The translations under genes and the position numbers were made by a program. Below, piece after piece: positions 11,712-53,174 of a stretch of 64,000 nucleotides of DNA. Numbering within the stretch: the first letter of the stretch is position 1; each line of letters starts with the position of its first letter. A model generated the notes under the pieces. That model had not been told where the DNA came from. It ran no database searches and saw nothing but the letters and a program-made list of their open reading frames with translations. The stretch lies in the IMG/VR virus record IMGVR_UViG_3300023296_000874, positions 1 through 64,000 of that record; one strand, written 5' to 3'.

Positions 11712-13259
11712 CTACGGAAGTCTGAGAATGTTGATGCCGTCGTCCGTGTGGCGCACCACCTCGTACCCGTGGCTGATGTAGTAGTCCTTCACCTTGCACA
11801 GGTCATGGGCAGCCACCGTGAGTCGCCTTGCAACAAAGGTCTCGGCTACGTGCTTGCCCACACCCATCCCACGGTAACCAGGTAGCAGGTACGCGGAGTT
11901 CCAGTCCTCATACTGAGCCACGAGCCCGGCGATTCTGCCCCATGCGATCACGGGCGTCAGCTTGCTCTCGGCAAGGATCTCTTCCTGTCCTACGTCACGG
12001 ATGTGCTGAGCCCATTCGAGCTTCACGTCTTCCCATTCCGAGCGCATGAACGCTACGTCACCATCACCGAACCCGATGAGCGTGCCGTGGTTCACAAGGT
12101 CCAGGGTCCAGCTCTGGGAGAGGCGGTACGGTCCGAGGCAGTGCAAGATCTCCTGCGCCTCTTGCACCGTTCCGCACGGGTACGGGTAGACGGTCTTGGT
12201 GTGCGGTACGACGTAGCCACCGTGGAAGTGCAGCAGCGCCTTGAGTCCCTTCATGTCGTGATAAAGGCGCGCGTGTACCGAGCAGTCGATGGAAGGCTTG
12301 ACAGTGCCATGAGCGCGCGTCAAACGATCAGAGATGTCAGCACTCGCAAAGATGAACTCGTCCGGCTTCACGTCACCCTTCTGCACACCGCGCGGGGTAG
12401 CCCAGAAGTGGGTGGGGATGGAGCTGATGAGCTGGGTCACGTTGCCGTCAGAGCTGTCAAGGAGGTTGGCCTCTTGAGCGAAGGCGAGCAGGGCTTGTGC
12501 CTCCTCCAAGGAGTCCACGAAGGTGTCCTTGGGGTCAACACCAGGGTAGAGCACGTCTTCGTCGTACAGCTCGGTCCTGCTCCACTGCACAGCTTGACGG
12601 TTGATGCAGAGGTCGACAATGGCTGCGGAAACATCCGTCTTGGAGCCTTCAAGCGGTATGGCCCCTCCCTCTGGGGTCACCGCGTAGCACGGATGCAGTC
12701 CCTTGTTCTCGGGGAGGCTGAGCTTGCTCCAATCGTTCGCGATGGTCAGGTTGATGCGACAGCTCTTCACCTGCGCCAGTGCCACGCTGATCAACTCATC
12801 GTCAGTCACGTCGCTCAGGAGCTTCCACCCTACGATGAAGGGACGGTTGGGCACCCACTCCCTCAGGTTGGCGAGGATCTTGGGCGTGCGCTTGAGGACG
12901 AGCGTCTGCTCGTCGTTCTTGGAGCGGATCTTCCCTTCCACGGGGACGGGAGCGTAGTCGCTGATGGCAGCGGGCATCAGGATGAAGTCGAAGTCACCCG
13001 TGTTTGCCAGGTCCTTCACTTGGTCGTAGAGCTCTTGGTACGTGCGGAACGTGTAGATGCCGCTCACGCCTCCGACGGTGTCCCCGTACATGCTCAAGGT
13101 GCGTTCAGCGGCGAGAAGCGTCACGTTGACACCCCTCGCCGCGAACAGATTGGCGACGGTACACCCGAACCGACCCTTGGAGCGGTTGGTGATGACGCGG
13201 ACGTCGTCGATGTCGACTTCCGTGCCTCCGGTCACGACAAGGGCTCTCAGTTCAGGCAT
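11712..13259 (-). CDS. CoaB (phosphopantothenate-cysteine ligase)-like domain fused to class II aldolase-like and GNAT-like domains
   Basis: VTGGTEVDIDDVRVITNRSKGRFG, AAISDY, LKRTPKIL, VGWKL, IAND (CoaB/DFP); GNVT...ATPRG...KPSIDCSVHARLY...LLHFH (aldolase II); YLLPGYRGMGVG (GNAT motif A). Confidence 0.8.
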   Translation of the reverse strand: MPELRALVVTGGTEVDIDDVRVITNRSKGRFGCTVANLFAARGVNVTLLAAERTLSMYGDTVGGVSGIYTFRTYQELYDQVKDLANTGDFDFILMPAAISDYAPVPVEGKIRSKNDEQTLVLKRTPKILANLREWVPNRPFIVGWKLLSDVTDDELISVALAQVKSCRINLTIANDWSKLSLPENKGLHPCYAVTPEGGAIPLEGSKTDVSAAIVDLCINRQAVQWSRTELYDEDVLYPGVDPKDTFVDSLEEAQALLAFAQEANLLDSSDGNVTQLISSIPTHFWATPRGVQKGDVKPDEFIFASADISDRLTRAHGTVKPSIDCSVHARLYHDMKGLKALLHFHGGYVVPHTKTVYPYPCGTVQEAQEILHCLGPYRLSQSWTLDLVNHGTLIGFGDGDVAFMRSEWEDVKLEWAQHIRDVGQEEILAESKLTPVIAWGRIAGLVAQYEDWNSAYLLPGYRGMGVGKHVAETFVARRLTVAAHDLCKVKDYYISHGYEVVRHTDDGINILRLP

Positions 13260-17010: not shown

Positions 17011-17368
17011 TGGATATCTCTCGGTAAGCGATCCGCTCAGGGTCCTCGAAGGAGGATGTCTCTCCGAGGGTATCTATGAAGCAGGTCCGGTGGACGGCTG
17101 TCCAATAGGAGCTATCAAGAGCGTGGTGGGGCATGACGGCAATCACATCCCCCGCCCGGAGCGTGGCTTGACAGTACAGGCACTCCCAAAACTCCAAGAG
17201 CGCGGGGTGCCCGTCTGCAAGCTGAACCGGGTGGAACCAACCGCCAGAGTGGTCCTCCATGATGACGGAGATCCACTCTGGCGTCACCAACACTCTCCCA
17301 GTTTCAGGTACAAGGAGGATGGGGTGAGGCTCCCTGATGCGCACATCGAGGGTAGCCTTCACTTTCAT
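16979..17368 (-). CDS. hypothetical protein
   Basis: ATGA coupling to AAA+ ATPase stop. Confidence 0.65.
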   Translation of the reverse strand: MKVKATLDVRIREPHPILLVPETGRVLVTPEWISVIMEDHSGGWFHPVQLADGHPALLEFWECLYCQATLRAGDVIAVMPHHALDSSYWTAVHRTCFIDTLGETSSFEDPERIAYREISNGTESEPSEG

Positions 17369-19659
17369 CCCACTGCCTGCCCGCGAGTGAACATCTGGTG
17401 GCTCTGCGCGTAGGTGGTGCGGCAGACGTTGATCTGCTGCCTGATGGCCGCGTTCCCGAGCGTGCTCGTCAGAGCCGCTTCCACGAGATCAGGAGTGACG
17501 CAAGTCTTCTCCGCAACGTGAGCCATCACGGTAGCCTTGACGCCGTCCTGCAAGTCGAACACGTTCATGCCGTCGAGCATTGCTACCGCCTCCTTGGCGT
17601 GCTCCGTGTGGTCCACGATGTAGTTCCGCATCATGGTGAGCCACACCTCGTCGATCACCTTCCGGATCACGTCGCCGCACGCACCTTCCAAGAGCTCAGC
17701 CCACAGCTCGTAGTGCTGGTCCAGGCCGTCCTCAACGGGGAGGAAGTTCTCGATGTAGTGCCGAAGGGTGTTGGTCCGGTCCTCGAGCGTCATCTCACCC
17801 ACGATCTCAACGCGGCTGAAGCGGCGCAACATGGGCGTCGGGATGCGCTGCGGGTGGTTGGTGGCTCCCCAGATCGTGATGCCGGGGTACGCAACCACAC
17901 CGTCCATGAGGTTCTGGAACTCCAGGCTCAGGTCAACGCGGCGGCTCAGGTCACCCTGGTCGCTCAGCACCATGTCGATCTCGTCAATCAGGATGTGAAC
18001 CTGCTTGCCGCTCTGCTTCCGGATCTTGATGGCGTGGTCGAAGAGCCGCTTCGGGTTCTTCTGCGCCTCGCCCATCCAGCAGGTCAGGAAGTCGGAGCCC
18101 ACCGCGAAGATCGAGATGCTGTCCTCGTGGGTAGCCATGGCCCGCATCACCTGCGTCTTGCCACAGCCCTGAGGGCCAACGAGAAGGATGTTGTTCTTGT
18201 CCGTGCTGCCGGAGGGCGAGGTGATGAGGAAGAGGTTGCCCCACTCGGTCGCGTCCTTCTGTCCTTCCACGAAGTCCCGTAGGTCGGCATAGCCGGAGCC
18301 CCAGATGTTCTCGAGGCTCACGTTGGGACGCTCGCCGGGGATCACCTCGAGTGCGCCGGGTGCTTCGCCGCCGAACTGGTTGCCAGTGCCAATCTTGCAC
18401 ACGAAGAAGCCGTTGGTGTCGTACAGGAACTTCCGCTCGTCCATCTTGAGGGTGAGTACCTGCTCCACGATGGCCTTGAGGTCGTCCCCGGTCCAGAGGC
18501 ACTCGGCTACGGCGCTGAGGCTCGTCTGGAGGTGCTCCTGGGCAAACAGGTCGGTCCGGCTGAGCATCTTGGTGCCTGGGCGTACCTGAATCTGGCTGAA
18601 GTCGAGCAACTCAAGCTCGTCCGCGAGGGTCCGGTACGACTCTCCGGTGCTCTTGCGGTGGATGCTCAGCCGGTAGAGGTCGATGCCGATGTTGTCCGCG
18701 CAAATCTTCGCCACCTCAGAGAGTGTGTCGAGGGTTTCGTGGAGCTGTCCGTAGAGCTGAAGCAGGGCGGCGATAGGCTCGAGCAGCAGGTTCCGGTTGA
18801 CGGGGTTGCGGATCGCTTCGCAGAGGTCAGCCAGCCGCTGCACGGTGAAGGCGGTCAGGTCCTCGCGGGAGGAGCCGTGGTCGATCTCACCCATCTTGTC
18901 GATGTTGTTCCACACCAGCAGAGCGAGGTCCGTGAGTACGGGGTCAGGGTCACGCCAAGTGGCCGTCACCATTGCGTGTCCGTCGGCGTGGCGCTTGCGG
19001 AGGAGCTGGAAGTAGTTGCTCACCGCCTGAGCAGTCTGCCGGGTGAGTCCGTCGTAGGCAGCCGGTGCCTGCAACAGCACGTGAACTCCCGCCACGAAGG
19101 AGGAGGTCGCGCCACGGTTGAGCTGCTGCTCAAGGGCGAGCTCTCGTAGAGCGTCACCACGTCCCTCGCCCAACTTCTTGAGCAGAGCGGCGGCGGTCTC
19201 TTCCTTGAGGCCCGCTTCGGCAACCTCGGTTCCGAGCTGGTCCATGGTGTCGTCGAAGCTGACGACGTTGGCACCGTTCATCAAGTCCACGGCGCGGATC
19301 ACACCGTCGTACATCACTTCCATGCCGGTGTACGCTTGGAGCAGGATGGACACGGGGCCGAAGGAGCTTGCGCCCGCACCCTTGAACATGTCCTCGGGCT
19401 CGCCGAAGGTCATCTGCTGGGTGCGTTGGGCGCTGCGGTTGTAGCTCTCGCTACCGAGCCGCTTGGCAATCGCCTCAAGGCTTTCCTTGCCGAGGCGGAT
19501 CTGGTCGACGGTGTTGGGCAGGTTGCCCAGCATGTCACGCAAGCCGCCCGCGATCCCCGACTTGATCACCTGAACGGTCCGGGCGTACCGGATGGGGTCA
19601 GAGATGGAGGCTTCGCGGGCCAGTACAGATGCGATGATGCTATCTACGTCGTTGTTCAA
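17365..19659 (-). CDS. AAA+ ATPase with ~450-aa uncharacterised N-terminal region
   Basis: Walker A GPQGCGKT, Walker B ILIDEID, SRH ATNHPQRIPTPMLRRF; TTG start after GGAGCACCAC. Confidence 0.9.
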   Translation of the reverse strand: MNNDVDSIIASVLAREASISDPIRYARTVQVIKSGIAGGLRDMLGNLPNTVDQIRLGKESLEAIAKRLGSESYNRSAQRTQQMTFGEPEDMFKGAGASSFGPVSILLQAYTGMEVMYDGVIRAVDLMNGANVVSFDDTMDQLGTEVAEAGLKEETAAALLKKLGEGRGDALRELALEQQLNRGATSSFVAGVHVLLQAPAAYDGLTRQTAQAVSNYFQLLRKRHADGHAMVTATWRDPDPVLTDLALLVWNNIDKMGEIDHGSSREDLTAFTVQRLADLCEAIRNPVNRNLLLEPIAALLQLYGQLHETLDTLSEVAKICADNIGIDLYRLSIHRKSTGESYRTLADELELLDFSQIQVRPGTKMLSRTDLFAQEHLQTSLSAVAECLWTGDDLKAIVEQVLTLKMDERKFLYDTNGFFVCKIGTGNQFGGEAPGALEVIPGERPNVSLENIWGSGYADLRDFVEGQKDATEWGNLFLITSPSGSTDKNNILLVGPQGCGKTQVMRAMATHEDSISIFAVGSDFLTCWMGEAQKNPKRLFDHAIKIRKQSGKQVHILIDEIDMVLSDQGDLSRRVDLSLEFQNLMDGVVAYPGITIWGATNHPQRIPTPMLRRFSRVEIVGEMTLEDRTNTLRHYIENFLPVEDGLDQHYELWAELLEGACGDVIRKVIDEVWLTMMRNYIVDHTEHAKEAVAMLDGMNVFDLQDGVKATVMAHVAEKTCVTPDLVEAALTSTLGNAAIRQQINVCRTTYAQSHQMFTRGQAVG

Positions 19660-30247: not shown

Positions 30248-30745
30248 TCAACCGTAGTCGAGCCAGTAGAGCTCAAGGGAGTCATCAGGGCAGAAGATCA
30301 CCCGCGCCGCTTCCATCTGAGCCACGTTCGAGCACCAGTGGTCGAAGTGGTAGTGGTACTGACACCGGAAGGTGTGGCGTGGCTGGTCGGGCTTGCACCA
30401 CTCGTTCCAGATGCGCGCTGCGTCCTCTACGGTCCCGTCTCCGTAGGCCACCTGACGGCTACGGTCACATCCACCATTGGTGAGGAGTCCTTTGGAATGG
30501 CCGTAGGGACAGACGTTGACGTACATCTTGCCGTCCACGATCTCGATGCCGATCCAGTAGGTGTGGGTCTCCCAATCCCACCACGCCATGAGGCAGCGCG
30601 GCCCACTGCCGGGGTCCTGGTCAGGCTTGTCCCACCGCTCCTGTAGATCCGCTCCCGTCATCAACGGGCGAGGCTTGATCTGTACCTTGTCGAACATCCA
30701 CTGCGGGGGTGCTCTGTAGGTCTCAGGCTCGGAGGTTTCTGCCAT
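30248..30745 (-). CDS. Trp/Cys/His-rich hypothetical protein
   Basis: ATG 30745 coupled to NUDIX stop. Confidence 0.65.
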   Translation of the reverse strand: MAETSEPETYRAPPQWMFDKVQIKPRPLMTGADLQERWDKPDQDPGSGPRCLMAWWDWETHTYWIGIEIVDGKMYVNVCPYGHSKGLLTNGGCDRSRQVAYGDGTVEDAARIWNEWCKPDQPRHTFRCQYHYHFDHWCSNVAQMEAARVIFCPDDSLELYWLDYG

Positions 30746-31140
30746 CAGGACACAAGTTCCCGTACTCGCTGGTTGTACTGAGCGAAGGGGCCACGGGCCA
30801 ACACGTCCCAGCCAACCCAATCCACCTTCCCCTCGGAGGGGTCGGTGGGAATCCAGGTGGCACGCTTCAGGTCCAGGTACTCCACCCGGAAGGTGACGCA
30901 GTCGTAGTCCTGATCTCCCTCACACACCGCGCGGTACACCTCGGTCAGCTCGGTGTCGATGGGGAGTTGGTAGCCGGTCTCCTCAGCGGCTTCACGGAGT
31001 GCTGCCTGCTCGGGGGTCTCTCCGGGGTCCACCTTCCCACCAGGCAGTCCGAAGGCGGTGTGGTCGTTGCGTCGGCTACAGGCCAGCACCTCACCCTCGG
31101 GGTTGACAACGATGATGCAAACGGCAATCGGTAGGCTCAT
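30745..31140 (-). CDS. NUDIX hydrolase
   Basis: [25 protein letters not shown] Nudix box. Confidence 0.9.
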
Positions 31141-31439
31141 GGGGCGTCCTTCTTCTTCGGTGGGATCAAGCCCACCAGGTCCCAGTACACTGAATGTGTT
31201 CGGTTGTGGTTGATTTCCAGCCACACGCGGAAGCACTCAGTGTCCAGAGCGAATCGCCCTCCTCTGAGTACTTTCCCGTCGCGGGTGATCTCCATGGTAC
31301 GTCCACCCTTGAGCTTCCTACCCCGGCTCGCTGCCACACGACGCACGAACATGATGTCGCGCTCGGCCTTGAGTACCGTCTCGGTTCCCTTGGGTCCGTG
31401 GATGTAGAGGCAGTAGGAGTAGTTCTTGGGCACGCTCAC
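31137..31439 (-). CDS. hypothetical protein
   Basis: GTGA and ATGA coupling on both sides. Confidence 0.65.
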
Positions 31440-31807
31440 CCCATAGGCTGTGGGTTGATGGTCGGAGGGCGGTCCCACTCGTCAGGCACGGTGCCCAACT
31501 GTTCCGTCCAATCAACGCCTCGAGCTATGCAGACGTCAGAGTAGTTCTTGAGGTAGTAGGGAGCCATCAGGGGGCTGATCCACGGAAGGTTGTCGGCCAC
31601 GTCTTTCGCGTCCTTCATGCCCATCCCCAGGTCCCGCATGGTCCGGATGACTTCCATCCGGTCACCGCCTGTGATGGTGACCGTTCCACGGTCGTCAGGG
31701 ACCATCTTCTGAACCCAGCCACGCTGGAGCACCTCGTTGCAGAGGTCGGTCATCTCCTCGAAATCGAGGGTGGCAAGGTAGTCTGCTACTTCTTCACGGG
31801 TCGGCAT
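31436..31807 (-). CDS. divergent ribosomal protein bL12 (L7/L12)-like protein, copy 2
   Basis: [23 protein letters not shown] (NTD-like); [29 protein letters not shown] (CTD-like). Confidence 0.65.
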   Translation of the reverse strand: [123 protein letters not shown]

Positions 31808-31810
31808 GGT

Positions 31811-32248
31811 TCAGCCCTCGTCGAATAGAAGAGTGGTTCGGTTCAGCGGTCCGGGCTCAACGTACTCAGCCTCGGCCTCGGGGATTTGTCCCTGTTCACC
31901 ACCCGGCGTCAGGTCGTAGCGCGCACCGATCCTGTCGAGGATCCCAACAATCTCCGGCTCACGGTCTACACCGTCTCGGTCCGTAGGGATCGGGAAAGTC
32001 CAGGGGTTGCGGGCAAGGTCCTCGGAGCGTACCTTGGATTCCTTGAGGCCCTCTCCAGTCACGGATCGGATCAGCTTGATGAGCTGGATCTTGTTGTCAC
32101 CGAAGGTGTGTACCGTGAGGGTGGTCGGACCGAACTTCTTCACCTTGATCTGCTGCCACCCCGCGCGGATAGCCTCGTTGCAGATGTCCTCGATGTCGAG
32201 GATCTCACACTGAGCGAGGTAGCTGACCACTTCTTCACGGGTTGTCAT
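31811..32248 (-). CDS. divergent bL12 (L7/L12)-like protein, copy 1, with terminal [10 protein letters not shown]
   Basis: [23 protein letters not shown] versus canonical [34 protein letters not shown]. Confidence 0.75.
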   Translation of the reverse strand: [145 protein letters not shown]

Positions 32249-32497
32249 CTACATAGTCCAGAGGAAGAAGGAGCCGGACGCCAGGATGGTGAACACCAGA
32301 CGCCAGCCCCAACCCAACGTGACGAGGGCCTGCGTGCGCTGGTAGAAGGTCACGTTGCGGAAGGATGCGGGCTGGTTGGAGTGCAGCCATGCGTAGGCGA
32401 AGAAGCTGAACAGGTAGGAGGCGAGGATCACCGCGAAGATTTGAGCATCCGAGGCTCCAGCAGTGATTTGGGTGGCGGTGTCTAAGTCCATGTCCAT
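32249..32497 (-). CDS. small two-TM membrane protein
   Basis: Two hydrophobic helices. Confidence 0.6.
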   Translation of the reverse strand: MDMDLDTATQITAGASDAQIFAVILASYLFSFFAYAWLHSNQPASFRNVTFYQRTQALVTLGWGWRLVFTILASGSFFLWTM

Positions 32498-32499
32498 GT

Positions 32500-32745
32500 C
32501 TACCTCATCAGAGCTGATGCGCTCATTCGGGTGCGGATGCGGCCCCAACGGGCCTTCTGGAATTTGTAGGAGGCAGCGATGTAGTCGGTACAGAGCTCGC
32601 GCACCACGTCGTATCCGAGGTCGAACGCCGCTGCCCCCTGCCATGCCTCGTCGGCCTTGCGCATTGCTGCGTGGAGATCGAGGAGGGTCTGGTCGCCACC
32701 GAAGTAGGCGAGGTCTCGAGGTGCGATGGCGGTGTACTTATACAA
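32500..32745 (-). CDS. hypothetical protein
   Basis: TTG start after ACGGAG; motif upstream. Confidence 0.65.
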   Translation of the reverse strand: MYKYTAIAPRDLAYFGGDQTLLDLHAAMRKADEAWQGAAAFDLGYDVVRELCTDYIAASYKFQKARWGRIRTRMSASALMR

Positions 32746-32768: not shown

Positions 32769-32796
32769 AACGCCTTTCGTAGCGTGAAAGTCAGAG
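32769..32796 (-). promoter_or_regulatory. putative phage promoter CTCTGAC-N17-CGTT
   Basis: Motif overlapping upstream stop codon. Confidence 0.7.
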
Positions 32797-33297
32797 CCTT
32801 TCGGAATAGATTGCGACACTGGCTCGAACAGCGTCTTCTTCGTCCGCCCGTCGGAGGGTGAGCAGTAGGCGGACGTGACCATCTACATGCCCTTTGAATC
32901 CACTTGCCTGATCGGCTTCTTTCCGGGCACTGATGAGCGCGTTAGCCATCCCACGGGAGGTCTCGCCACGCAAGGAGCGTATAGAGATCATGAGGACTGA
33001 GTGGGCTCCACGCACCCGTTCGAACTTACCGATACTGAATCCCTTCAGGTTACTTGAGTCCCACCCGTCGATGAGTAGCTCCCTTCGGTCCACGGATATC
33101 AGGGAGATAGCCCATGAGGTGTGAGTGTACGCTTCGAGCTTCGCCCACACCTCAACCTGACGCAGCAACCCGCTGAGCTTCAGGGCAGTCAAGGGCGGCG
33201 TGAACACAAGGTCTGGGAACTCTGGAGGCGGGACGGGCTCGCCGTCTTCCCCCATCAGCTCTTCGAGCCTCGCATGTTGCTCTGATTCTTCAGGCAT
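32791..33297 (-). CDS. hypothetical protein, N-terminal ARLEELMG tag, paralog of 33305
   Basis: ATG 33297 after GAGGA; shares FPDL...VExW...RRELxxxGWD with neighbour. Confidence 0.75.
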   Translation of the reverse strand: MPEESEQHARLEELMGEDGEPVPPPEFPDLVFTPPLTALKLSGLLRQVEVWAKLEAYTHTSWAISLISVDRRELLIDGWDSSNLKGFSIGKFERVRGAHSVLMISIRSLRGETSRGMANALISARKEADQASGFKGHVDGHVRLLLTLRRADEEDAVRASVAIYSERL

Positions 33298-33304
33298 GTG
33301 GTCC

Positions 33305-33784
33305 TCAATAGAGTGGCTTGGATCCGAAGCCCACGAAAGCGGGGCGCACTTCTTCCTCGTCCCTTGCCACGTAGAGCAGGAGTCGGGGGTGTGGATACTT
33401 CTCAAGGTCTGGGGGCTTGTCTCTCTTGGACTTAGCCGTCAGGGCTCGCACGGCGGCTTTCGCCTTGGGGTCCTTGTAGAGGCTGGTGCGAACGGCAAGA
33501 TAGAACCGGTTGGCTGCCGATGACCATGCCAGCTCACCAAGGCCGGGGAGGGTCAGTAGGCGTTCCTCATCCCATCCCGCCACTACCAACTCACGGCGAA
33601 TCGCGTTGGGCATTCCCACCTTGAAGTTCAAGCTACGTCCAGTCCAGAGCTCCACCTCGTAAAGGATCGCAAGGAGCTGCTCGATGGTCATGGGAGACGT
33701 GTAGCGAAGATCGGGGAACGGATGGGGATCCGGGGTGTCGCCCATCAACTCGTCGAGTCGACTATGCTGTTCGGTCTCTTCCAT
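33305..33784 (-). CDS. hypothetical protein, N-terminal SRLDELMG tag, paralog of 32791
   Basis: As above. Confidence 0.75.
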   Translation of the reverse strand: MEETEQHSRLDELMGDTPDPHPFPDLRYTSPMTIEQLLAILYEVELWTGRSLNFKVGMPNAIRRELVVAGWDEERLLTLPGLGELAWSSAANRFYLAVRTSLYKDPKAKAAVRALTAKSKRDKPPDLEKYPHPRLLLYVARDEEEVRPAFVGFGSKPLY

Positions 33785-43295: not shown

Positions 43296-43691
43296 CTACG
43301 CTTCAAGAAGCAGCTCGATCCGGTCCACGTCAGTTTCGTTCCACGGGTTGATGTCCACGTCTTGAATCAGACGCCACCTACGCGGAGGCCAGTTGGTGGC
43401 GACACGTCCATAGTCGCAGCCACCTTCATCGTTGCGCTCAAACGTGTAGATGTTCCGGGCGGTTACGCACGCTCCAGTCCGATAGGACCCAGAGGGAGCC
43501 ACGTGAGTCACAATGCCGTAGCCTTCACCGTATCCGGTCCCCATGAACCACATCTGTCCGGGGCGGGGTAGGTCGGTGAACTCAGGAGCGCGGGAGCAGA
43601 GCTCGAACCTCTCTTGAGGCATGGCGTCCCGGTGCTTGTTGCAGAACACACAGGTCCAATCTGTCGATCGGATGTGGTGGGGTCCTCTCAT
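43296..43691 (-). CDS. hypothetical protein with terminal DRIELLLEA tag
   Basis: CxxC...C then SH3-like region; ATGA coupling. Confidence 0.7.
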   Translation of the reverse strand: MRGPHHIRSTDWTCVFCNKHRDAMPQERFELCSRAPEFTDLPRPGQMWFMGTGYGEGYGIVTHVAPSGSYRTGACVTARNIYTFERNDEGGCDYGRVATNWPPRRWRLIQDVDINPWNETDVDRIELLLEA

Positions 43692-44490: not shown

Positions 44491-44862
44491 TCATCCTTCC
44501 ATCAGTAGTGTCATCCTATCAGGATGAGACGCTTCTTGAGCGCGGTTCGCGGCTACGAGATAGTGAGCGTAGTCGCCGCCAGCCCTCTCGATGATTCCAA
44601 CCCAATCGCCGTGATAGATCACAGCCGCCCTTCGGTACGCCTCATCCTTCTTCATGAGCCGGGTGACTGTACCGGGAACGGTGCGCCACTCGCAGCTCTC
44701 GGGTCCGGTGTCCCACCTACACTCAATCCGAAGGTTGAGCAGGTCCTCGTGACCCATGTGAGCGTAGCGGTTGCGGATGATCACCCGGACGATGTTGTTC
44801 GCCCCCCGGATGTGCCAACGCTTCTCGGTGATGTCAGGATTCTCAGGTAAGTCCAAGGGCAT
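44491..44862 (-). CDS. hypothetical protein with terminal DRMTLLMEG tag
   Basis: ATG 44862 after AGGAGAG. Confidence 0.7.
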   Translation of the reverse strand: MPLDLPENPDITEKRWHIRGANNIVRVIIRNRYAHMGHEDLLNLRIECRWDTGPESCEWRTVPGTVTRLMKKDEAYRRAAVIYHGDWVGIIERAGGDYAHYLVAANRAQEASHPDRMTLLMEG

Positions 44863-45091
44863 CAACTCTCTCCTGTTCGGCTTCGTCATCCCAGTGCATG
44901 TGCAGAAGGCGGCGGGAAGGGCTTGACTCATCGAGCCCTTTGGCGTCCATCTCCTCCACCATTGCCCAGGTGAAGCTGCATGTGCCGTGTCCTTCTGCAT
45001 ACACGGTCACACCCTCGGGAATCTCCTCGATGATCTCTGCCATCACGAAGTCGTTGATGGGGTTCCAGAACACCCGTACCATTCGTGCCAC
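44843..45091 (-). CDS. small hypothetical protein
   Basis: GTG immediately after upstream stop. Confidence 0.65.
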   Translation of the reverse strand: MARMVRVFWNPINDFVMAEIIEEIPEGVTVYAEGHGTCSFTWAMVEEMDAKGLDESSPSRRLLHMHWDDEAEQERVDALGLT

Positions 45092-45322
45092 TCAAACCTC
45101 CATCAACAGTTCAAGACGGTCGACGGGGTCAGCCCACCCTATGAACTCCCAGCCGTGCTCATAGTTCCCCATGGGCAGGTCACCTACGCACCAGTAGTCA
45201 CCGTTCGCATCCCTAATCCGAGCACCGAAGTTCTCGGGATAGGTCAACACGACTGTTCCGGTAAGGTCGTGCCATGGTCCCACGAAGTGAATGATCATGC
45301 CCACCTCAGGTCCACGCTCCAT
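45092..45322 (-). CDS. small SH3-like protein with terminal DRLELLMEV tag
   Basis: PEVGMIIHF...GTVVLT...; abuts both neighbours. Confidence 0.75.
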   Translation of the reverse strand: MERGPEVGMIIHFVGPWHDLTGTVVLTYPENFGARIRDANGDYWCVGDLPMGNYEHGWEFIGWADPVDRLELLMEV

Positions 45323-49170: not shown

Positions 49171-49359
49171 TCAGTCTCCTTGAACAATCAACAGCAGAGC
49201 AGCAAGCGAAGAGAAGGGGATGTGGCCCTCCTCACAGTCCTTGACTGAGTTCCGTATGAGGAGGGCAACGCCACCCCCATGAACCACAGCCCGCTTCTCA
49301 AGGAGCGACAAGATGGCCTCGTTGGATACCACCACAAGTTCGGTGCCGGTCTCAATCAC
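49171..49359 (-). CDS. small hypothetical protein
   Basis: GTG 49359 overlapping Pnk stop. Confidence 0.45.
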   Translation of the reverse strand: MIETGTELVVVSNEAILSLLEKRAVVHGGGVALLIRNSVKDCEEGHIPFSSLAALLLIVQGD

Positions 49360-50323
49360 CGAAGAAGTCCTTCGCCCACTCGAACTGGAAGCCCGCCCGT
49401 GCCGCAAAGGTCTGGTCGCTCTTCATGTCGCCCACGTAGATGCAGGCGTCCGGGTTGAGCTTGTACTTCTCGATGAACACGACGCCCATGCCTGCCATCG
49501 GCTTGCGCCAGTAGGAGCTCGGGGGTCCACCACGGTCAGGGGCGAACAGGTACTCGATGTCATGTCCGAGCTGCCGGTTGGTCTCATCGAAGCAGTCGCG
49601 GCAGGTGACGTCGCTGACGTACTTGGGGCTGTCCGAGGCTTGGCTCACACCGCTCTGGTTGCTGATGCCCAGGATCCGGTAGCCCTTGTCGATGTACTCC
49701 TGGATGATGGCGGTACGTCCCTCCAGAGCGCGCACGTCCCCGATCTCCTTGGGGTAGTGGTCACCACTGTTGGTCAGGCGCAACGTGCCGTCGTAGTCGA
49801 GCAGCAGAGCCTTCCCCGTGTACTCGGAGCCGAAGTCGGTCACCACGTCCACTTCTTCGATGCTGTCGAAGCCCTCGGCCATGGTCGGGTCTTCGAACTG
49901 CTTCCAGTACGCAAACTGAGCCATGGGCGGGAACATGTTCGGGTTCTTGCGGTGCTTCTTGTACTCGGCCTTGCCGAAGAGCACACCGAACTTCTGGATC
50001 TGACGCCGGGCCGCAAAGAGCTGAGCCTGCTCACGGGTGGTCTGTAGCCACAGCACGCGGACAGGTAGGTTGAGCTGCCTTGCGTTCACCATCAGGCCCC
50101 GGCGTGCGGCGACGTTCCGGTAGGTGTTGTCAAGCACGAAGCGGCGCTTCCCGCGCTTGTACTGCTCCTGCATCACCTTGTAGATCTTGCTGTCGGGACT
50201 GTTCAGCTTCCCGCCGATCTCGTCACGGTTGATGCGGGTGTAGCCCTGCTTCACGAGGGATTGGACGTGCGTGGTCTTCCCGCCGCCCGGAGGTCCCATG
50301 ACAATGACGATTTCGTGTTCCAT
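49352..50323 (-). CDS. polynucleotide kinase/3'-phosphatase-like protein (P-loop kinase plus HAD domain)
   Basis: GPPGGGKTT, INRDE, VLDNT; LLDYDGTL, ISNQSG, RKP, YVGD...D...A. Confidence 0.85.
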   Translation of the reverse strand: MEHEIVIVMGPPGGGKTTHVQSLVKQGYTRINRDEIGGKLNSPDSKIYKVMQEQYKRGKRRFVLDNTYRNVAARRGLMVNARQLNLPVRVLWLQTTREQAQLFAARRQIQKFGVLFGKAEYKKHRKNPNMFPPMAQFAYWKQFEDPTMAEGFDSIEEVDVVTDFGSEYTGKALLLDYDGTLRLTNSGDHYPKEIGDVRALEGRTAIIQEYIDKGYRILGISNQSGVSQASDSPKYVSDVTCRDCFDETNRQLGHDIEYLFAPDRGGPPSSYWRKPMAGMGVVFIEKYKLNPDACIYVGDMKSDQTFAARAGFQFEWAKDFFGD

Positions 50324-50581
50324 TCAATCCTCGAGTAGTAGCGCGAGCCTGTCCACTTCTTGTACAGGTGGTTCAACAACCTCAGGAGCCAGTTCGCGCG
50401 GTTCGTAATAGCCCGTCGTCCCGTCGTCATGACGGACGGTGAACACCGCGCCGTGCCCGTTCTTCAATCGGGTGATAATTCCGTACACGCCCCACTTCCT
50501 CGAGAGGAGTGCTTCGGGCATCCAGTCATTCGATATGGACTCAGGGCGCACGGTGAGCACGCGGTCGTTCACGGCAATCAT
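50324..50581 (-). CDS. small SH3-like protein with terminal DRLALLLED tag
   Basis: VNDRVL...GIITRL...VRHDDG...YEPREL. Confidence 0.75.
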   Translation of the reverse strand: MIAVNDRVLTVRPESISNDWMPEALLSRKWGVYGIITRLKNGHGAVFTVRHDDGTTGYYEPRELAPEVVEPPVQEVDRLALLLED

Positions 50582-51000
50582 ACTCCAATCTCCAGGTATG
50601 GGTTCTGAGGATCATTCGTGTTGGTGATGGCGATGATGCCGTCCAAATCTCTGAAAATGGTAGCCATCACTTCGTCGTAGGTGTTCCGGTTGATGATCTG
50701 GTCCCTGTGCTTGAGGCACTGACCCTCCGCGAGGAGGATGTCAGGGGTGTACCGCTCCATGGTGGAGGGCCTCCTGTCCAAGACGAGGAGCAGCCTCTTG
50801 TCCTCGTTGTTCGCCAGTTCGCGCCACCGAAGCAGGTACGCTGACCGGACCTGGTACATGGACAGCAACGAGGTCATTTCGACGTTGAGGTCTGCCCTTG
50901 CAGCCTCGGTAGCTGCAAGGGTTTGCATGGCTCCTTCTGACACCCCCTCTTCCGGAGGGGGGTCAATCTCAAGTAGGAGGTGAAGCCTATCGAGAGCCAC
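50578..51000 (-). CDS. hypothetical protein with N-terminal DRLHLLLEID tag
   Basis: Likely GTG start at 51000 overlapping prs end; ATGA coupling at 50578. Confidence 0.65.
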   Translation of the reverse strand: MALDRLHLLLEIDPPPEEGVSEGAMQTLAATEAARADLNVEMTSLLSMYQVRSAYLLRWRELANNEDKRLLLVLDRRPSTMERYTPDILLAEGQCLKHRDQIINRNTYDEVMATIFRDLDGIIAITNTNDPQNPYLEIGV

Positions 51001-51973
51001 CCCAGCCTCGCGGGAGGTGGTGAAGCACGGAGTCCACCAACACCGGAGCGCATCGCATGATGCGGAAGATGCCGGAGGTGCCTGGCTTGTCAAGGGTGTT
51101 CACCATCTTCACGGCGCGCGGGTGGCTGTCAAAGGAGTACACCGCGTCGAGTACGCCGTCGAACATGGCGTGCGTGTCGGCGGGGCTCTTGGTGTAGACG
51201 CCGTGGCTCAGGATCGCGCTGACGCCAATGGCACCCGCGTCCATGTAGCTCTTCGCTCCACCCACGAGGCTGCTACCGCTCCGGGTCATGTCGTCCACGA
51301 GGATCACGTACTTGCCCTTGACGTCGGCGCTGACGTTGGTCACCTCGGTGGTCCCGCCGTCGATGCGTCGCTTGCCGATGAAGGCCGGGAGCCAGCCACC
51401 CATCTCGGAGGCGATGTACTCCACACGCTTCGCACCACCGGCATCAGCGGAGCCAATCACGGCATCAGCGACGCCCTGCTCAGCCACGATCTCGCGGATC
51501 GCGTCGAGGATGATCGGCTGTCCACGAGAGTGGATCTGGTGGGCTCGGTCTCCGAAGTAGTGGGGGATGCCCTCTGCATGGAGATCGAGGAACACGATCC
51601 GGTTGCCGTTGTAGGCCTCGGGGATGGCGCTGAGCAGCCGGGCGCGCGTCTTGGCAGTCACCACCTCACGCGTCTTGGGCTTGGCGCGCTCCATGGTGCT
51701 GTACCCGAAGTAGGGGATCACGATGGTCAGAGAGCGAGCTCCGTAGGCCACAATCGCGCAGCAAGCGTCGAACATCTCCATCGTGTCGTTGTCGTTGATG
51801 GTGCCGCCGAGGTACACCACGTCACGGTCACGCACTGAGGTTTCGATGCGCTGGTACCGCTCCCCGTCAGGGAAGGTCTTGATCAGCACCTCGCCCCGGT
51901 CGAAGCAGGGGTCTACGTCAACAAACGTAGGGGCGAGGTACTCGTAGCTTCGGGTAGCAAAGAGAAGAGGCAC
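50987..51973 (-). CDS. prs: ribose-phosphate pyrophosphokinase family protein
   Basis: FPDGE, VIPYFGYS, DLH, SADAGGAKR, VDDMTRSGSS, SHGV. Confidence 0.9.
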   Translation of the reverse strand: MPLLFATRSYEYLAPTFVDVDPCFDRGEVLIKTFPDGERYQRIETSVRDRDVVYLGGTINDNDTMEMFDACCAIVAYGARSLTIVIPYFGYSTMERAKPKTREVVTAKTRARLLSAIPEAYNGNRIVFLDLHAEGIPHYFGDRAHQIHSRGQPIILDAIREIVAEQGVADAVIGSADAGGAKRVEYIASEMGGWLPAFIGKRRIDGGTTEVTNVSADVKGKYVILVDDMTRSGSSLVGGAKSYMDAGAIGVSAILSHGVYTKSPADTHAMFDGVLDAVYSFDSHPRAVKMVNTLDKPGTSGIFRIMRCAPVLVDSVLHHLPRGWGGSR

Positions 51974-51986
51974 GTTGGTTCTCCTT

Positions 51987-53174
51987 TTAGAGGACGCTCT
52001 CTACGATACGAACGTAGAGGTCATCCAGCTTGTCCATGTCGGGGCTGTAAGGTAGCACGGGAGTGAGCTCGGGAAGGGGCTCGAGGCCCTTCTTCACCCG
52101 CGCAGTCACACGCTGCTTCTCGGTACCGTAGTACGATGTGTAGATGTCACCGAGAGCGGCGTTCTCGCGATCAGCCCAGTCCACCAACTCGTCGTAGGTC
52201 CAGGCACCCTTGCGGATAGCGAGGAGCTCTTCACGGTCGATCCCGCCGCGCCACACATGCACCTTGCCCGTCGTCAAGATCTCCCGTCCCATGCGGAGCA
52301 GGCGAACGAGGTGGGCACCGTGCTTGGTGTCGTAGCCGGAGGCAGCTTCCAGCGCAGCCCGCTTGGGGTTCCGCTGACGCTTCCAGGTCTCGAAGCTCTT
52401 CCAGTTCTTTTGGGCGTCCTTGTACCGCTTCTCACCCTTGAGGGCCTCGAGCAGTCCTTCGTCGATCCCGATGGAGCGTGCGGCAGCAATCCACAGTTCA
52501 TCGTCGGTGGTCACGCCGATGGTGGCGAGGGTCTCAGCGATGTTGTCCTTGGCGCGGATCTTCTCGCTGTCGGCCATTTCGCCGAAGTCCCACTTCCACT
52601 CGTCAAGCTGCTTGTCGATGGCGGCGAGGAGCACGTTGCGCTGATGCTGCGTCACCACTTCCTCACCGAGGCCAAACTCCTCGCGGGTCGGCTTGTGGGT
52701 CGGAGGGTTGAGCAACCAGGCCCGGTGTCCCTTGATGCGCTTGAGCTGCTGGAAGGCGTAGCCGGTGAAGCGGTGCTTGGCGGCTCCACTCAGGAAGAGG
52801 TCCCGGTGTTCGCGGAGCAACTGCCCGGCCCAGTTGTGCATGAGCAGCTCTTCGTCGCGGCAGAAGAGCACGTCGAGCATTCCGGGGTTGCAGTCGGCGG
52901 TCAGCTTCATGAACTTGCCGAGGCCGTACACGACGCCCTCGAGCTTCTCGCGTTCGGCGGCGTCCATCTGCTCGGCGTCGAGGTACTTGCGGAAGGGTTC
53001 CATCTGCCCAGGCTTGTCGCACTGGTCGAAACGCTTGCGGAAGGTCAAGTGGTACGGACGTGGAGGTAGGCAGACGCCCTTGAGGTCTACGTCCGAAGTG
53101 TCGGTGTGGAGCCCGTAAGCTCGGGAACCAGCCACTCCAACGAGGATCGCAGAGTCATGTAGGTCGAAATCCAT
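51987..53174 (-). CDS. predicted nucleotidyltransferase (Pol-beta superfamily, PF10127-like)
   Basis: GSRAYGLHTDTSDVDLKGV, NPGMLDVLF, GYDTKHGAHLVRLL. Confidence 0.85.
   Translation of the reverse strand: MDFDLHDSAILVGVAGSRAYGLHTDTSDVDLKGVCLPPRPYHLTFRKRFDQCDKPGQMEPFRKYLDAEQMDAAEREKLEGVVYGLGKFMKLTADCNPGMLDVLFCRDEELLMHNWAGQLLREHRDLFLSGAAKHRFTGYAFQQLKRIKGHRAWLLNPPTHKPTREEFGLGEEVVTQHQRNVLLAAIDKQLDEWKWDFGEMADSEKIRAKDNIAETLATIGVTTDDELWIAAARSIGIDEGLLEALKGEKRYKDAQKNWKSFETWKRQRNPKRAALEAASGYDTKHGAHLVRLLRMGREILTTGKVHVWRGGIDREELLAIRKGAWTYDELVDWADRENAALGDIYTSYYGTEKQRVTARVKKGLEPLPELTPVLPYSPDMDKLDDLYVRIVESVL

What the first reader, a model, noticed from the sequence alone, without database searches (positions are those of the whole stretch)
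31436..32248. Tandem pair of hinge-less ribosomal protein bL12-like genes
Seen: both have an NTD-like start (TREEV..YLA...E..D.CNE) and a CTD-like factor-binding helix ([45 protein letters not shown]). The Ala/Gly hinge is replaced by a short W-containing linker, and one ends in the tag [10 protein letters not shown]. Established: bL12 recruits translational GTPases, and bL12-domain genes are known in some phages, usually singly. Inference: a heterodimeric stalk substitute or GTPase-factor decoy.
Basis: partly seen in the sequence, partly recalled or inferred. Interest (0 to 1): 0.6.

Follow-up and report, generated by a model that had tools for sequence, protein, structure and literature searches.

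The report
Hinge-shortened bL12 gene pair in phage
A 257-kb salt-lake phage carries two adjacent, diverged copies of the bacterial ribosomal stalk protein bL12 that keep both functional ends but have lost most of the flexible hinge; one copy ends in a short peptide tag that at least a dozen unrelated proteins of the same phage also carry.

Summary
Window 31811-32248(-) (A, 145 aa) and 31436-31807(-) (B, 123 aa) are tightly packed, apparently translationally coupled paralogs. They sit in a 257,533-bp contractile-tailed jumbo phage from salt-lake metagenomes.

Both are collinear with whole bacterial bL12:
- an N-terminal two-helix hairpin (the dimerisation and uL10-docking module);
- a linker of 8-11 residues without Ala, against 22-31 residues (44% Ala) in 63 bacterial bL12;
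- a bL12 C-terminal domain (CTD).

A's CTD is complete and keeps the helix 4-5 residues that are nearly invariant in bacterial bL12. B keeps only the first half confidently.

Among 1.84 billion representative proteins, only A, B and one single-copy metagenomic relative (P0002) match over the full length.

New here: A's tail "tag" is not private. The motif [DSN]-R-φ-x-φ-L-φ-[DE]-[DE] lies at the C-terminus of 11-12 mostly unrelated proteins of this phage (0.01-0.08 expected).

Function was not tested. The one complex prediction gave no verdict.

Best reading: phage bL12 derivatives that dimerise and act on the host stalk or its GTPases, with A tied to a motif-reading hub. This is a new variant of a known kind, since phage bL12 genes are already described.

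The parts
31811..32248 (-). Gene A, bL12-like protein, 145 aa plus stop
   Evidence: ORF. TIGR00855 E 3e-6. PDB 1dd3 E 2.5e-5. AF2 mean pLDDT 82.9. GC3 0.74.
32156..32248 (-). A residues 1-31: N-terminal two-helix hairpin (helices 4-13 and 16-28), ending in GW; homolog of the bL12 NTD
   Evidence: AF2 pLDDT 83-86. hhalign residues 2-25 against bL12 NTD, P 2.1e-4. No column shuffle reached the real score in 300 runs. The best Foldseek hit is full-length E. coli L7, 1rqu_A, 128 columns.
32123..32155 (-). A residues 32-42: short linker [11 protein letters not shown] in place of the Ala-rich hinge
   Evidence: 11 residues against 22-31 in 63 bacterial bL12. There is a 16-18-residue gap in the profile-profile alignment. 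pLDDT about 69. G40 is invariant in the trio.
31907..32122 (-). A residues 43-114: complete bL12 C-terminal domain (beta-alpha-alpha-beta-alpha-beta)
   Evidence: pLDDT 89-97. Z 9.5, rmsd 2.0 A over 66 of 67 residues to 4v5m_BL. 12 of 15 columns of helices 4-5 that are nearly invariant in bL12 are identical in A.
31814..31906 (-). A residues 115-145: disordered acidic tail; the last ten residues (31814-31843, [10 protein letters not shown]) carry the shared terminal motif
   Evidence: pLDDT 43-62. The tail end is conserved in P0002 as VEPGPLRRDMLLLDD. Motif enrichment is shown.
31436..31807 (-). Gene B, bL12-like paralog, 123 aa plus stop. It starts 3 nt after A's stop, with GAGGG about 8 nt upstream
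   Evidence: TIGR00855 E 0.033. GC3 0.76.
31715..31807 (-). B residues 1-31: N-terminal hairpin (helices 4-13 and 16-28)
   Evidence: AF2 pLDDT 89-94. BLASTP alignments to genuine bL12 span B residues 3-75.
31568..31690 (-). B residues 40-80: first half of the bL12 CTD (beta1, helix 4, helix 5, beta2). The linker before it is residues 32-39, VQKMVPDD
   Evidence: pLDDT rises to 89-93 over helices 4-5 (residues 50-72) and is lower at both ends. Conserved or conservatively replaced: G47, R50, I54, R55, R58, G61, G63, M64, K65, D66, A67, K68. Linker length.
31439..31567 (-). B residues 81-123: divergent C-terminal part, not confidently folded, without the terminal motif
   Evidence: pLDDT below 50. 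It does not align with A or P0002.
32249..32497 (-). Upstream small hydrophobic protein of about 82 aa (start placed by homology). Its stop TAG abuts A's ATG. Its position is conserved in the related contig
31137..31439 (-). Downstream 100-aa basic protein of unknown function. Its GTG start overlaps B's stop (GTGA). Its position is conserved in the related contig
   Evidence: No family or fold lead.
30745..31140 (-). Nudix hydrolase gene, last in the same tightly packed run. Its position is conserved in the related contig
   Evidence: phrog_1198 E 1.5e-18. Homolog P0005 in L003.

Best explanation
A and B are phage copies of a bacterial rplL (bL12) gene that were duplicated in tandem in this phage lineage.

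Shown:
- Each keeps the N-terminal helical hairpin. In bL12 this hairpin forms the dimer and clamps the C-terminal helix of uL10.
- Each keeps the basic and hydrophobic helix 4-5 face of the C-terminal domain. In bL12 this face contacts EF-Tu, EF-G, IF2 and RF3.
- The 22-31-residue Ala-rich hinge is reduced to 8-11 residues.
- A carries an acidic tail ending in a motif shared with 11-12 other proteins of this phage.

Inferred: the proteins dimerise through the hairpin, as homodimers, heterodimers or both. During infection they compete with the freely exchanging host bL12 for uL10 sites. With so short a tether, the factor-binding domain would stay near the stalk base. Factor recruitment would then be damped or re-routed rather than simply boosted. 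A's tail motif would connect the modified stalk, or the free dimer, to whatever reads that motif.

B, which has no tail and a degenerate distal CTD, would be a sub-functionalised partner or competitor of A.
For: Homology and architecture:
- Searches show the CTD match (E down to 6.7e-9).
- Searches give the fold match (Z 9.5, rmsd 2.0 A over 66 of 67 residues).
- Searches support the NTD (score 22.7 against a null maximum of 14.1 in 300 shuffles). The full-length collinear alignment has E 1.5e-15.
- One search gives single gapped BLASTP alignments of A (residues 3-113) and B (residues 3-75) to genuine bL12.
- One search gives the linker lengths.
- One search shows that A keeps 12 of 15 near-invariant helix 4-5 columns. 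B's changes there are conservative, including R for K65. That substitution is tolerated in E. coli (PMC6110070 abstract).

The NTD has been retained through 28-50% divergence in all three family members. Most phage and non-ribosomal bL12-domain proteins keep only the CTD.

The genes are maintained. GC3 matches coding genes, gene order is conserved in L003, and strain variants carry 6 synonymous changes against 4 replacements with no indels.

The phage carries other translation genes: LysRS and GlnRS.

Background on bL12 domains, dimerisation, uL10 docking and the role of the hinge comes from PMC3299993. Ribosome association of a phage bL12-domain protein comes from PMC6375957.

The tail motif is enriched and acts at the protein level.
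Against: - No result here shows binding to uL10, to ribosomes or to GTPases. The complex prediction gave no verdict.
- Scores are far below the curated bL12 cut-off: 27.6 and 14.6 bits against 84.4.
- The bL12 CTD is widely used outside the ribosome, in proteins with up to seven matching stretches. The domain alone therefore does not imply stalk function.
- One hydrophobic NTD position that is conserved in bL12 (the L of MTVLEL) varies as L/E/E in the family and as R in a strain variant.
- From memory: laboratory hinge deletions of E. coli L7/L12 still bind but are inactive. A stalk carrying these proteins would therefore lose, not gain, function.
- The host is unknown.
- The shared motif suggests that the main partner may have nothing to do with ribosomes.
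Confidence: 0.45

Rival explanations
1. Off-ribosome decoy or adaptor. The hairpin only makes a dimer. The two closely tethered CTDs bind host translational GTPases in solution. They either sequester the factors or, through A's tail motif, deliver them to a phage hub.
For: The helix 4-5 face is conserved. The short, sequence-conserved linker suits a compact bivalent binder better than a long-reach stalk arm. The phage has no uL10 and no GTPase of its own. A's tail motif implies a second partner.
Against: A decoy would not need the NTD's bL12-type hydrophobic pattern, yet that pattern is kept in all three members. From memory: isolated bL12 binds the factors only weakly, so a stoichiometric decoy would have to be very abundant. 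Nothing here tests binding.
Confidence: 0.25
2. A protein-interaction module unrelated to translation. The bL12 CTD fold serves as a generic small binding domain, as in the many non-ribosomal multi-CTD proteins and as in the structurally similar ClpS. A is one of many clients, or an adaptor, of the machine that reads the shared terminal motif. Candidate readers are one of the phage's two AAA+ ATPases or a sliding clamp.
For: In the 1.84-billion-protein library, 2576 representatives match at E <= 0.001. The best-scoring ones carry several CTD-matching stretches, up to seven, and some occur in Nannocystis. P0143 shares the PW(T/P)(F/I)P strand motif with A but has no NTD. ClpS is the next structural neighbour, Z 7.9. 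The motif occurs in 11-12 mostly unrelated ORFan proteins. Two AAA+ ATPases of the Cdc48/PAN/FtsH/CdvC type are encoded.
Against: This reading does not explain why the rplL-type NTD and the exact helix 4-5 residues are kept. The phage invests in translation genes. No reader of the motif was identified: there is no dnaN or PCNA homolog, and the N-terminal regions of the AAA+ proteins match no solved structure by sequence.
Confidence: 0.22
3. Decaying duplicate. B, or both genes, is a non-functional remnant of a captured rplL.
For: B's distal CTD is not confidently folded, and B has no detectable homolog other than A and P0002.
Against: The frames are intact and GC3 is 0.74-0.76. The starts look translationally coupled. 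There are no indels in variant strains, and B's only observed change is synonymous. B's NTD and helices 4-5 are the best-modelled parts of the protein.
Confidence: 0.05

Closest known systems
Bacterial ribosomal protein bL12 (L7/L12, rplL; TIGR00855; Pfam PF16320 + PF00542)
   Same: The order of modules is the same: N-terminal helical hairpin, linker, C-terminal beta-alpha-alpha-beta-alpha-beta domain. The near-invariant helix 4-5 residues are kept (E. coli G62, K65, I69, K70, R73, G77, G79, L80, K81, E82, K84).
   Different: The linker is 8-11 residues without Ala, against 22-31 Ala-rich residues. Scores lie far below the curated cut-off. The genes are not next to rplJ, and the genome has no uL10. 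A has an extra 31-residue tail with a terminal motif. B lacks a recognisable distal CTD.
Phage bL12-domain proteins (Mizuno et al. 2019, PMC6375957), for example in Ralstonia phage RSB3, N4-like roseophages and Salmonella phage FSL SP-076
   Same: They are phage-encoded and carry the PF00542 domain with the factor- and uL11-contact residues conserved. A role in redirecting host translation has been proposed.
   Different: As described, they contain the CTD domain only, alone or embedded in proteins of up to 724 aa. Among cultivated phages they were found only in genomes under 80 kb. Here the NTD is kept, the genome is 257 kb, and the gene is duplicated in tandem. tblastn of A against 50,697 phage records finds nothing.
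Full-length bL12 of huge phages (Al-Shayeb et al. 2020, PMC7162821); example in LR756501, 735 kb
   Same: It is encoded by a huge phage and has both NTD and CTD.
   Different: The LR756501 protein is 123 aa and aligns to a bacterial bL12 over residues 8-130 in one piece, so its hinge is of normal length. A, B and P0002 lack most of the hinge.
Laboratory hinge-deletion mutants of E. coli L7/L12 (recalled from memory: Oleinikov, Traut and colleagues; Gudkov, Bubunenko and colleagues, early 1990s)
   Same: The NTD and CTD are joined by a much shortened linker.
   Different: Those are engineered proteins. As I recall, they bind ribosomes but fail in factor-dependent reactions. Whether the natural phage proteins behave the same way is untested. 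PMC3299993 states only that hinge flexibility matters for CTD mobility and factor interaction.
Non-ribosomal proteins with repeated bL12 CTDs, for example Nannocystis WP_346660302.1 (593 aa) and metagenomic P0007 (953 aa)
   Same: They share the CTD sequence signature [27 protein letters not shown].
   Different: They have no bL12-type NTD matching the A/B/P0002 profile. They carry 2-7 CTD-matching stretches. Their function is unknown.
Terminal docking peptides of other systems (analogy only, recalled from memory)
   Same: Like A's tail motif, these are short amphipathic peptides at a protein terminus that attach many clients to one hub. Examples are the T4/RB69 gp45-clamp tails (SLDFLFG, LFDMFDF), the bacterial beta-clamp motif QLxLxL, the ESCRT-III MIM1 motif (..RLxxL[KR]) read by Vps4/CdvC, and the archaeal and eukaryotic P-stalk C-terminal tail (LxxLF).
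   Different: The consensus here, [DSN]-R-phi-x-phi-L-phi-[DE]-[DE], matches none of them exactly. No reader was identified.

Membership tests
bL12 (ribosomal protein L7/L12) | C-terminal domain with the beta-alpha-alpha-beta-alpha-beta fold and the conserved helices 4-5 | tested here: met
   A: Z 9.5, rmsd 2.0 A over 66 of 67 residues. Profile E 6.7e-9. 12 of 15 near-invariant columns identical. B: only the first half is confident.
bL12 (ribosomal protein L7/L12) | N-terminal helical hairpin homologous to the bL12 dimerisation and uL10-binding domain | tested here: met
   AF2 places helices at 4-13 and 16-28 in both proteins. hhalign P 2.1e-4, with no column shuffle of 300 reaching the real score. 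A single-profile HMM search alone is not significant.
bL12 (ribosomal protein L7/L12) | Long, flexible, Ala/Gly/Pro-rich hinge between the two domains | tested here: not met
   8-11 residues without Ala, against 22-31 residues with 44% Ala in 63 bacterial bL12.
bL12 (ribosomal protein L7/L12) | Whole-protein score above the curated TIGR00855 cut-off (84.4 bits) | tested here: not met
   27.6 bits (A) and 14.6 bits (B).
bL12 (ribosomal protein L7/L12) | Encoded next to rplJ (uL10) in the rplKAJL-rpoBC region | tested here: not met
   The neighbours are phage ORFans and a Nudix hydrolase. No uL10 homolog was found in the 257-kb genome.
bL12 (ribosomal protein L7/L12) | Dimer bound to the C-terminal helix of uL10 on the 50S subunit | tested here: inconclusive
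   Complex prediction with two copies of A residues 1-45 and E. coli uL10 residues 120-165 scored 0.02, which is no verdict. The host is unknown.
bL12 (ribosomal protein L7/L12) | Recruits translational GTPases and stimulates their GTPase activity | not testable with these tools
   Only residue conservation could be checked.
Phage-encoded bL12-domain proteins (Mizuno 2019) | A PF00542 domain encoded in a viral genome | tested here: met
   PF00542 is precomputed for A and P0002. The record is an IMG/VR virus with tail sheath and baseplate genes.
ClpS (N-degron adaptor, same fold) | Sequence family membership | tested here: not met
   ClpS appears only as a structural neighbour, with Z up to 7.9 at 1-11% identity (ranks 12-39). 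All sequence and profile hits are to bL12. The residues of the ClpS binding pocket were not examined.

The most novel reading that the evidence does not exclude
The shared terminal motif may be the ligand of bL12-type C-terminal domains. It would be an acidic amphipathic helix that mimics the acidic helices through which EF-Tu and EF-G touch helices 4-5 of bL12.

On this reading, a dozen or more otherwise unrelated phage proteins dock on the host ribosomal stalk. A carries both a CTD and the motif. B carries a half-CTD and no motif. The two would then be hinge-less, uL10-bound or free regulators of that traffic. The phage would in effect turn the stalk into a landing platform for its own proteins.
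Probability: 0.07. Interest if true: 0.85.

Novelty: new variant of a known kind. Interest (0 to 1): 0.55.

Why it matters
Phage bL12 genes have been known since 2019, but what they do is still open. Most described examples are bare CTDs, whose link to the ribosome is uncertain.

This pair keeps the module that anchors bL12 to uL10 and has lost most of the hinge, which published work links to CTD mobility and factor interaction. It therefore offers a clean, directly testable contrast:
- Does it load onto the stalk?
- If it does, does it slow translation, bias it, or re-purpose it?

The terminal motif, shared by at least 11 mostly unrelated proteins, may be of wider interest. It suggests a hub-and-client network inside a jumbo phage. 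A single peptide pull-down could identify the hub, and that result would also assign a role to many ORFan genes.

Tried and rejected
Complex prediction:
- Complex prediction (two copies of A residues 1-45 with E. coli uL10 residues 120-165) scored 0.02. This is no verdict and counts neither for nor against binding.

Searches for more relatives, all blank apart from P0002:
- INPHARED phages by DNA and by tblastn.
- IMG/VR by single protein and by alignment.
- JGI metagenome contigs, which returned only the window's own contig Ga0222664_1000010.
- The word-index search for B found only B itself.
- ESM Atlas feature search with A residues 1-42 gave no usable hit. The Atlas fold search returned only bL12 families.

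Other blanks:
- The bL12-NTD HMM against all phage ORFs was not significant on its own.
- The genome has no uL10, no small-GTPase domain, no tRNA genes, no dnaN and no PCNA.
- The region has no Rfam family and no sigma-70-like promoter, and terminator-like sites occur at chance level.
- No RNA run holds the locus, so expression is unknown.
- PHROGs gave nothing useful for the direct neighbours or for the motif-bearing proteins.
- The 100-aa downstream protein has no lead.
- The N-terminal regions of the two AAA+ ATPases match no solved structure by sequence.
- A close-relative scan with the GlnRS found no related IMG/VR phage.
- Host assignment from the nearest cellular CTDs failed, because all scores are about 40-44 bits across many phyla.

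Rejected readings:
- A haloarchaeal host: the median protein pI is 5.6, and an OmpA/Pal-like domain protein points to a Gram-negative bacterium.
- The motif as a DNA repeat: the codons differ throughout.
- The plus-strand ORF 31886-32485 as a gene: it overlaps gene A and the small membrane-protein gene on the opposite strand. Both of those have homologs in L003, and the non-overlapping GC3-based gene call left the plus-strand ORF out.
Full report
**What is there.** The window is the first 64 kb of an IMG/VR virus record of 257,533 bp. The record is linear and estimated 81% complete. It is the same sequence as JGI metagenome contig Ga0222664_1000010. The sequence is about 60% G+C.

The locus occurs in salt-lake metagenomes of 18 studies. 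Three of these may be the source sample, and none is an RNA run. The phage has a tail sheath and a baseplate hub, so it is a contractile-tailed jumbo phage. Its median protein pI of 5.6 and an OmpA/Pal-like domain protein argue for a Gram-negative bacterial host rather than a haloarchaeal one.

On the minus strand lie gene A (31811-32248, 145 aa) and gene B (31436-31807, 123 aa). They belong to a tightly packed run of genes.
- An 81-aa ORF (32500-32745) comes first, followed by a small hydrophobic protein (32249-32497).
- The stop TAG of the hydrophobic protein abuts A's ATG.
- A's TGA is followed by three bases and then B's ATG, with GAGGG about 8 nt upstream.
- B's stop overlaps the GTG start of a 100-aa basic protein (31137-31439).
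- A Nudix hydrolase gene (30745-31140) follows.

No Rfam family or promoter-like site lies in the region, and terminator-like sites are at chance level.

A and B are paralogs with 35% identity over the first 88 residues, E 2e-14. Evidence for the C-terminal domain (CTD) is strong.
- A matches the bL12 model TIGR00855 at E 3e-6 and T. maritima L12 (PDB 1dd3) at E 2.5e-5.
- A profile built from A, B and their one relative matches PDB bL12 chains down to E 6.7e-9.
- The AF2 model of A (mean pLDDT 82.9) has helices at 4-13 and 16-28, a lower-confidence linker, a CTD at 43-114 with pLDDT 89-97, and a disordered tail.
- That CTD superposes on the ribosome-bound E. coli bL12 CTD with Z 9.5 and rmsd 2.0 A over 66 of 67 residues. 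ClpS, which has the same fold, follows at Z 7.9 or below with 1-11% identity.

Foldseek's best hit is full-length E. coli L7 (1rqu_A), aligned over 128 columns.

I took 63 genuine rplL products from bacterial loci. Fifteen columns of helices 4-5 are nearly invariant in them.
- A is identical at 12 of the 15. In E. coli numbering, anchored on the 62GANK65 motif named in PMC6110070, these include G62, K65, I69, K70, R73, T76, G77, G79, L80, K81, E82 and K84.
- B keeps eight and replaces the others conservatively, including R for K65. The abstract of PMC6110070 reports that K65R is tolerated.

The AF2 model of B is confident for the N-terminal hairpin (pLDDT 89-94). It is also confident for helices 4-5 of the CTD (pLDDT 89-93), with beta1 and beta2 beside them. 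Residues 81-123 are below 50.

**The N-terminal domain (NTD).** A plain HMM of 61 bacterial bL12 NTDs is not significant against the 4858 ORFs of the phage: A ranks 6th (E 17) and B 14th. Profile-profile comparison settles the point.
- The first 42 columns of the A/B/P0002 alignment match the bL12 NTD alignment in register (residues 2-25 against 4-27). The score is 22.7 and P is 2.1e-4.
- 300 column-shuffled controls gave 7.3 +/- 1.7, with a maximum of 14.1. The reversed alignment gave 11.8.
- Full-length profiles align from the NTD through helix 5 with one 16-18-residue gap at the hinge: Prob 98.5, E 1.5e-15.
- Single gapped BLASTP or tblastn alignments to real bL12 span A residues 3-113 and B residues 3-75.

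The sequences also share the hydrophobic spacing of the bL12 hairpin. Compare [23 protein letters not shown] with, for example, SKEEVIDYLSELSVVELSDLVGE of L026.

One position differs. The L of the conserved MTVLEL turn is L, E and E in A, B and P0002, and R in a strain variant.

**The hinge.** I measured the linker from the end of the FGV (here GW) motif to seven residues before the invariant Gly of the GxxK motif.
- In 63 bacterial bL12 it is 22-31 residues, median 26, with 44% Ala.
- It is [11 protein letters not shown] (11 residues) in A, RQIKFRSFGPT (11) in P0002 and VQKMVPDD (8) in B, with no Ala in any of them.

'Hinge-less' is therefore a fair description. The linker is similar in sequence between A and P0002, with G40 invariant in all three proteins. 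That conservation suggests a defined connector rather than a floppy one.

**Rarity and history.** A profile search of 1.84 billion representative proteins returned 2576 matches at E <= 0.001. Only A, B and P0002 match over the full length. The best-scoring other hits match only the CTD, in several stretches per protein (up to seven). Some of these proteins occur in Nannocystis and are auto-annotated as L7/L12.

P0002 is 158 aa and 46% identical to A. It lies on three short ENA metagenome contigs. The gene order there is the same (small hydrophobic protein, bL12-like gene, 100-aa protein, Nudix hydrolase), but with a single bL12-like gene. The tandem duplication is therefore specific to this phage lineage, and the ancestral working unit cannot have been an A-B heterodimer.

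Contigs of related strains in three further runs cover both genes without indels.
- A differs at 11 bases: six synonymous changes and four replacements (S9A, L17R, T45K, G102E).
- B's one observed difference is synonymous.

This is weak evidence, but it is consistent with purifying selection.

**The tail tag is a proteome-wide motif.** A's last residues (…[16 protein letters not shown]) are conserved in P0002 (…VEPGPLRRDMLLLDD), although the rest of the tail has diverged. I scanned my crude set of 298 gene calls for the pattern R..[LIMV]L[FLMI][DE].
- It lies within six residues of the C-terminus in 12 proteins. Shuffling each protein gives 0.08 expected, with a maximum of 2 in 200 runs.
- A second, slightly different pattern gives 11 C-terminal, 2 N-terminal and 4 internal sites, against 0.01, 0.05 and 0.51 expected.

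The codons differ throughout, so this is not a DNA repeat. The bearers are unrelated by BLASTP except for one paralog pair. None of the ten bearers scanned has a confident family match.

N-terminal variants (RL[ED]ELMG[DE]) occur in two paralogs upstream of the locus (32791-33297 and 33305-33784). One also occurs in the 167-aa protein of the related contig. B has no such motif.

I could not identify what reads the motif.
- The genome has no dnaN or PCNA homolog.
- It does encode two AAA+ ATPases of the Cdc48/PAN/FtsH/CdvC type, at window 17365-19659 and genome 81331-82917.
- Their N-terminal regions match no solved structure by sequence.

The motif resembles clamp-binding tails, MIM1 motifs and P-stalk tails. 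Those resemblances are recalled from memory and are leads only.

**Context relevant to function.** The phage encodes a lysyl-tRNA synthetase (window 58817-60310, 46-47% identical to bacterial LysRS). It also encodes a glutaminyl-tRNA synthetase (genome 191579-193189, about 52% identical to annotated GlnRS genes). Directly upstream of the GlnRS lies a 95-aa motif-bearing ORF.

The phage has no tRNA genes, no uL10 and no GTPase domain. It therefore invests in translation but must act through the host's stalk base and factors.

**How it most likely works.** The established background is as follows.
- The bL12 NTD hairpin forms an antiparallel dimer that binds about 10 residues of the uL10 C-terminal helix.
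- The hinge gives the CTD its reach.
- The CTD provides the interaction sites for the translational GTPases. For EF-Tu, a study cited there maps the contact to CTD helices 4 and 5 (PMC3299993).
- bL12 is among the readily exchangeable ribosomal proteins.

Most phage and non-ribosomal bL12 derivatives discard the NTD. A, B and P0002 keep it. I therefore favour the following model, with confidence 0.45. The proteins form NTD-mediated dimers that compete for uL10 sites. The short tether holds the CTD near the stalk base, so factor recruitment is damped or redirected. A's tail links the assembly to the reader of the motif.

From memory, engineered hinge deletions of E. coli L7/L12 bind ribosomes but are inactive. 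That fits an inhibitory or re-purposing role better than a simple boost.

The rivals are:
- an off-ribosome bivalent decoy or adaptor for GTPases (0.25);
- a translation-unrelated interaction module serving the motif's hub (0.22);
- decay of B (0.05).

The one complex prediction available gave no verdict and is not counted either way.

**Comparison and novelty.** Phage bL12 genes are known. Mizuno et al. 2019 describe mostly CTD-only proteins, found among cultivated phages only in genomes under 80 kb. Al-Shayeb et al. 2020 list L7/L12 among the genes of huge phages. I found a canonical 123-aa copy with a normal-length hinge in the 735-kb phage LR756501.

Four things are new here:
- the combination of a retained NTD with a hinge cut by about two thirds;
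- the tandem pair, with one sub-functionalised copy;
- the extreme rarity of the family, with only three members found;
- a C-terminal motif that ties A into a set of at least 11 mostly unrelated proteins of the same phage.

A and B work like bL12 derivatives, and by descent they are such derivatives. They fail three membership criteria for bona fide bL12: the hinge, the curated score and the genomic context. I therefore file the finding as a new variant of a known kind, with interest 0.55.

Noticed in passing
window 1665-1910(+), 1907-2161(+), 4887-5624(-), 43296-43691(-), 44491-45000(-), 45092-45322(-), 50324-50581(-); genome 174844-175752(+), 176817-177266(+), 184547-185092(+), 191291-191578(+), 194003-194251(+): Together with A, these proteins carry the motif [DSN]-R-phi-x-phi-L-phi-[DE]-[DE] at or near the extreme C-terminus. 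Apart from one paralog pair, they are unrelated to each other. The first pattern places it within six residues of the C-terminus in 12 proteins, against 0.08 expected. The second pattern gives 11 sites within eight residues, against 0.01 expected. Codons differ between the sites, so the conservation is at the protein level. What reads the motif is unknown.
   Followed up: partly
window 32791-33297(-), 33305-33784(-), 53239-53748(-); L003:33-536: The same motif occurs near the N-terminus: HARLEELMGED, HSRLDELMGD, MIDRLALLMDDDDD, and QNRLMELMEE in the related contig. The first two proteins are paralogs lying upstream of the bL12-like pair.
   Followed up: partly
window 58817-60310(-): A phage-encoded lysyl-tRNA synthetase. 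It is 46-47% identical over 99% of its length to bacterial LysRS genes, some of which sit in mislabelled 'phage' records.
   Followed up: partly
L093:7579-9189 (genome 191579-193189, +): A phage-encoded glutaminyl-tRNA synthetase, about 52% identical to annotated GlnRS genes. It is immediately preceded by a 95-aa ORF that bears the terminal motif.
   Followed up: partly
window 17365-19659(-); L087:17331-18917 (genome 81331-82917, -): Two AAA+ ATPases of the classical Cdc48/PAN/FtsH/CdvC clade. Their long N-terminal regions have no match. They are candidate readers of the terminal motif.
   Followed up: partly
window 49352-53174(-) and 60437-62008(-); 30745-31140(-): A nucleotide and NAD-related accessory cluster. 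It contains a polynucleotide-kinase-like ATPase, ribose-phosphate pyrophosphokinase, a nucleotidyltransferase (phrog_388), a nicotinate/nicotinamide phosphoribosyltransferase-like protein and a Nudix hydrolase.
   Followed up: no
window 11712-13259(-): A 515-aa protein with a CoaB-like (phosphopantothenate-cysteine ligase) domain and an aldolase/epimerase-like domain. This is unusual cargo for a phage.
   Followed up: no
L087:13678-15963 (genome 77678-79963, -); L088:1006-3594; L088:9422-11155: A bacterial-type DNA topoisomerase I (604 bits, above the curated cut-off), a family-A DNA polymerase and a helicase.
   Followed up: no
L092:7384-9066 (genome 171384-173066, +): A 560-aa protein that joins a periplasmic solute-binding (SsuA-like) domain to an OmpA/Pal-type peptidoglycan-binding domain. 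It suggests a Gram-negative host.
   Followed up: no
P0007, P0008, P0012, P0139, P0143 and others: A large and apparently unstudied population of non-ribosomal proteins with 2-7 stretches matching the bL12 C-terminal domain. Some occur in Nannocystis and are auto-annotated as L7/L12. P0143 (140 aa, two CTDs) shares the 'PWPIP' strand motif with A.
   Followed up: partly
L097:1507-1878 (LR756501.1, 735-kb uncultured phage): A canonical 123-aa full-length bL12 with a normal-length but non-Ala hinge (SPKTKILGVNVIPIPTLVADKTS) in one of the largest known phage genomes.
   Followed up: partly
phages collection, e.g. OR846596.1, OR848316.1, OR850039.1: Several records labelled as Listeria, Staphylococcus, Enterococcus or Salmonella phages carry ordinary rplL, lysS and glnS genes, with 50-63% identity to the rplL query. 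They look like host DNA filed as phage, and they inflate counts of 'phage' ribosomal proteins.
   Followed up: no
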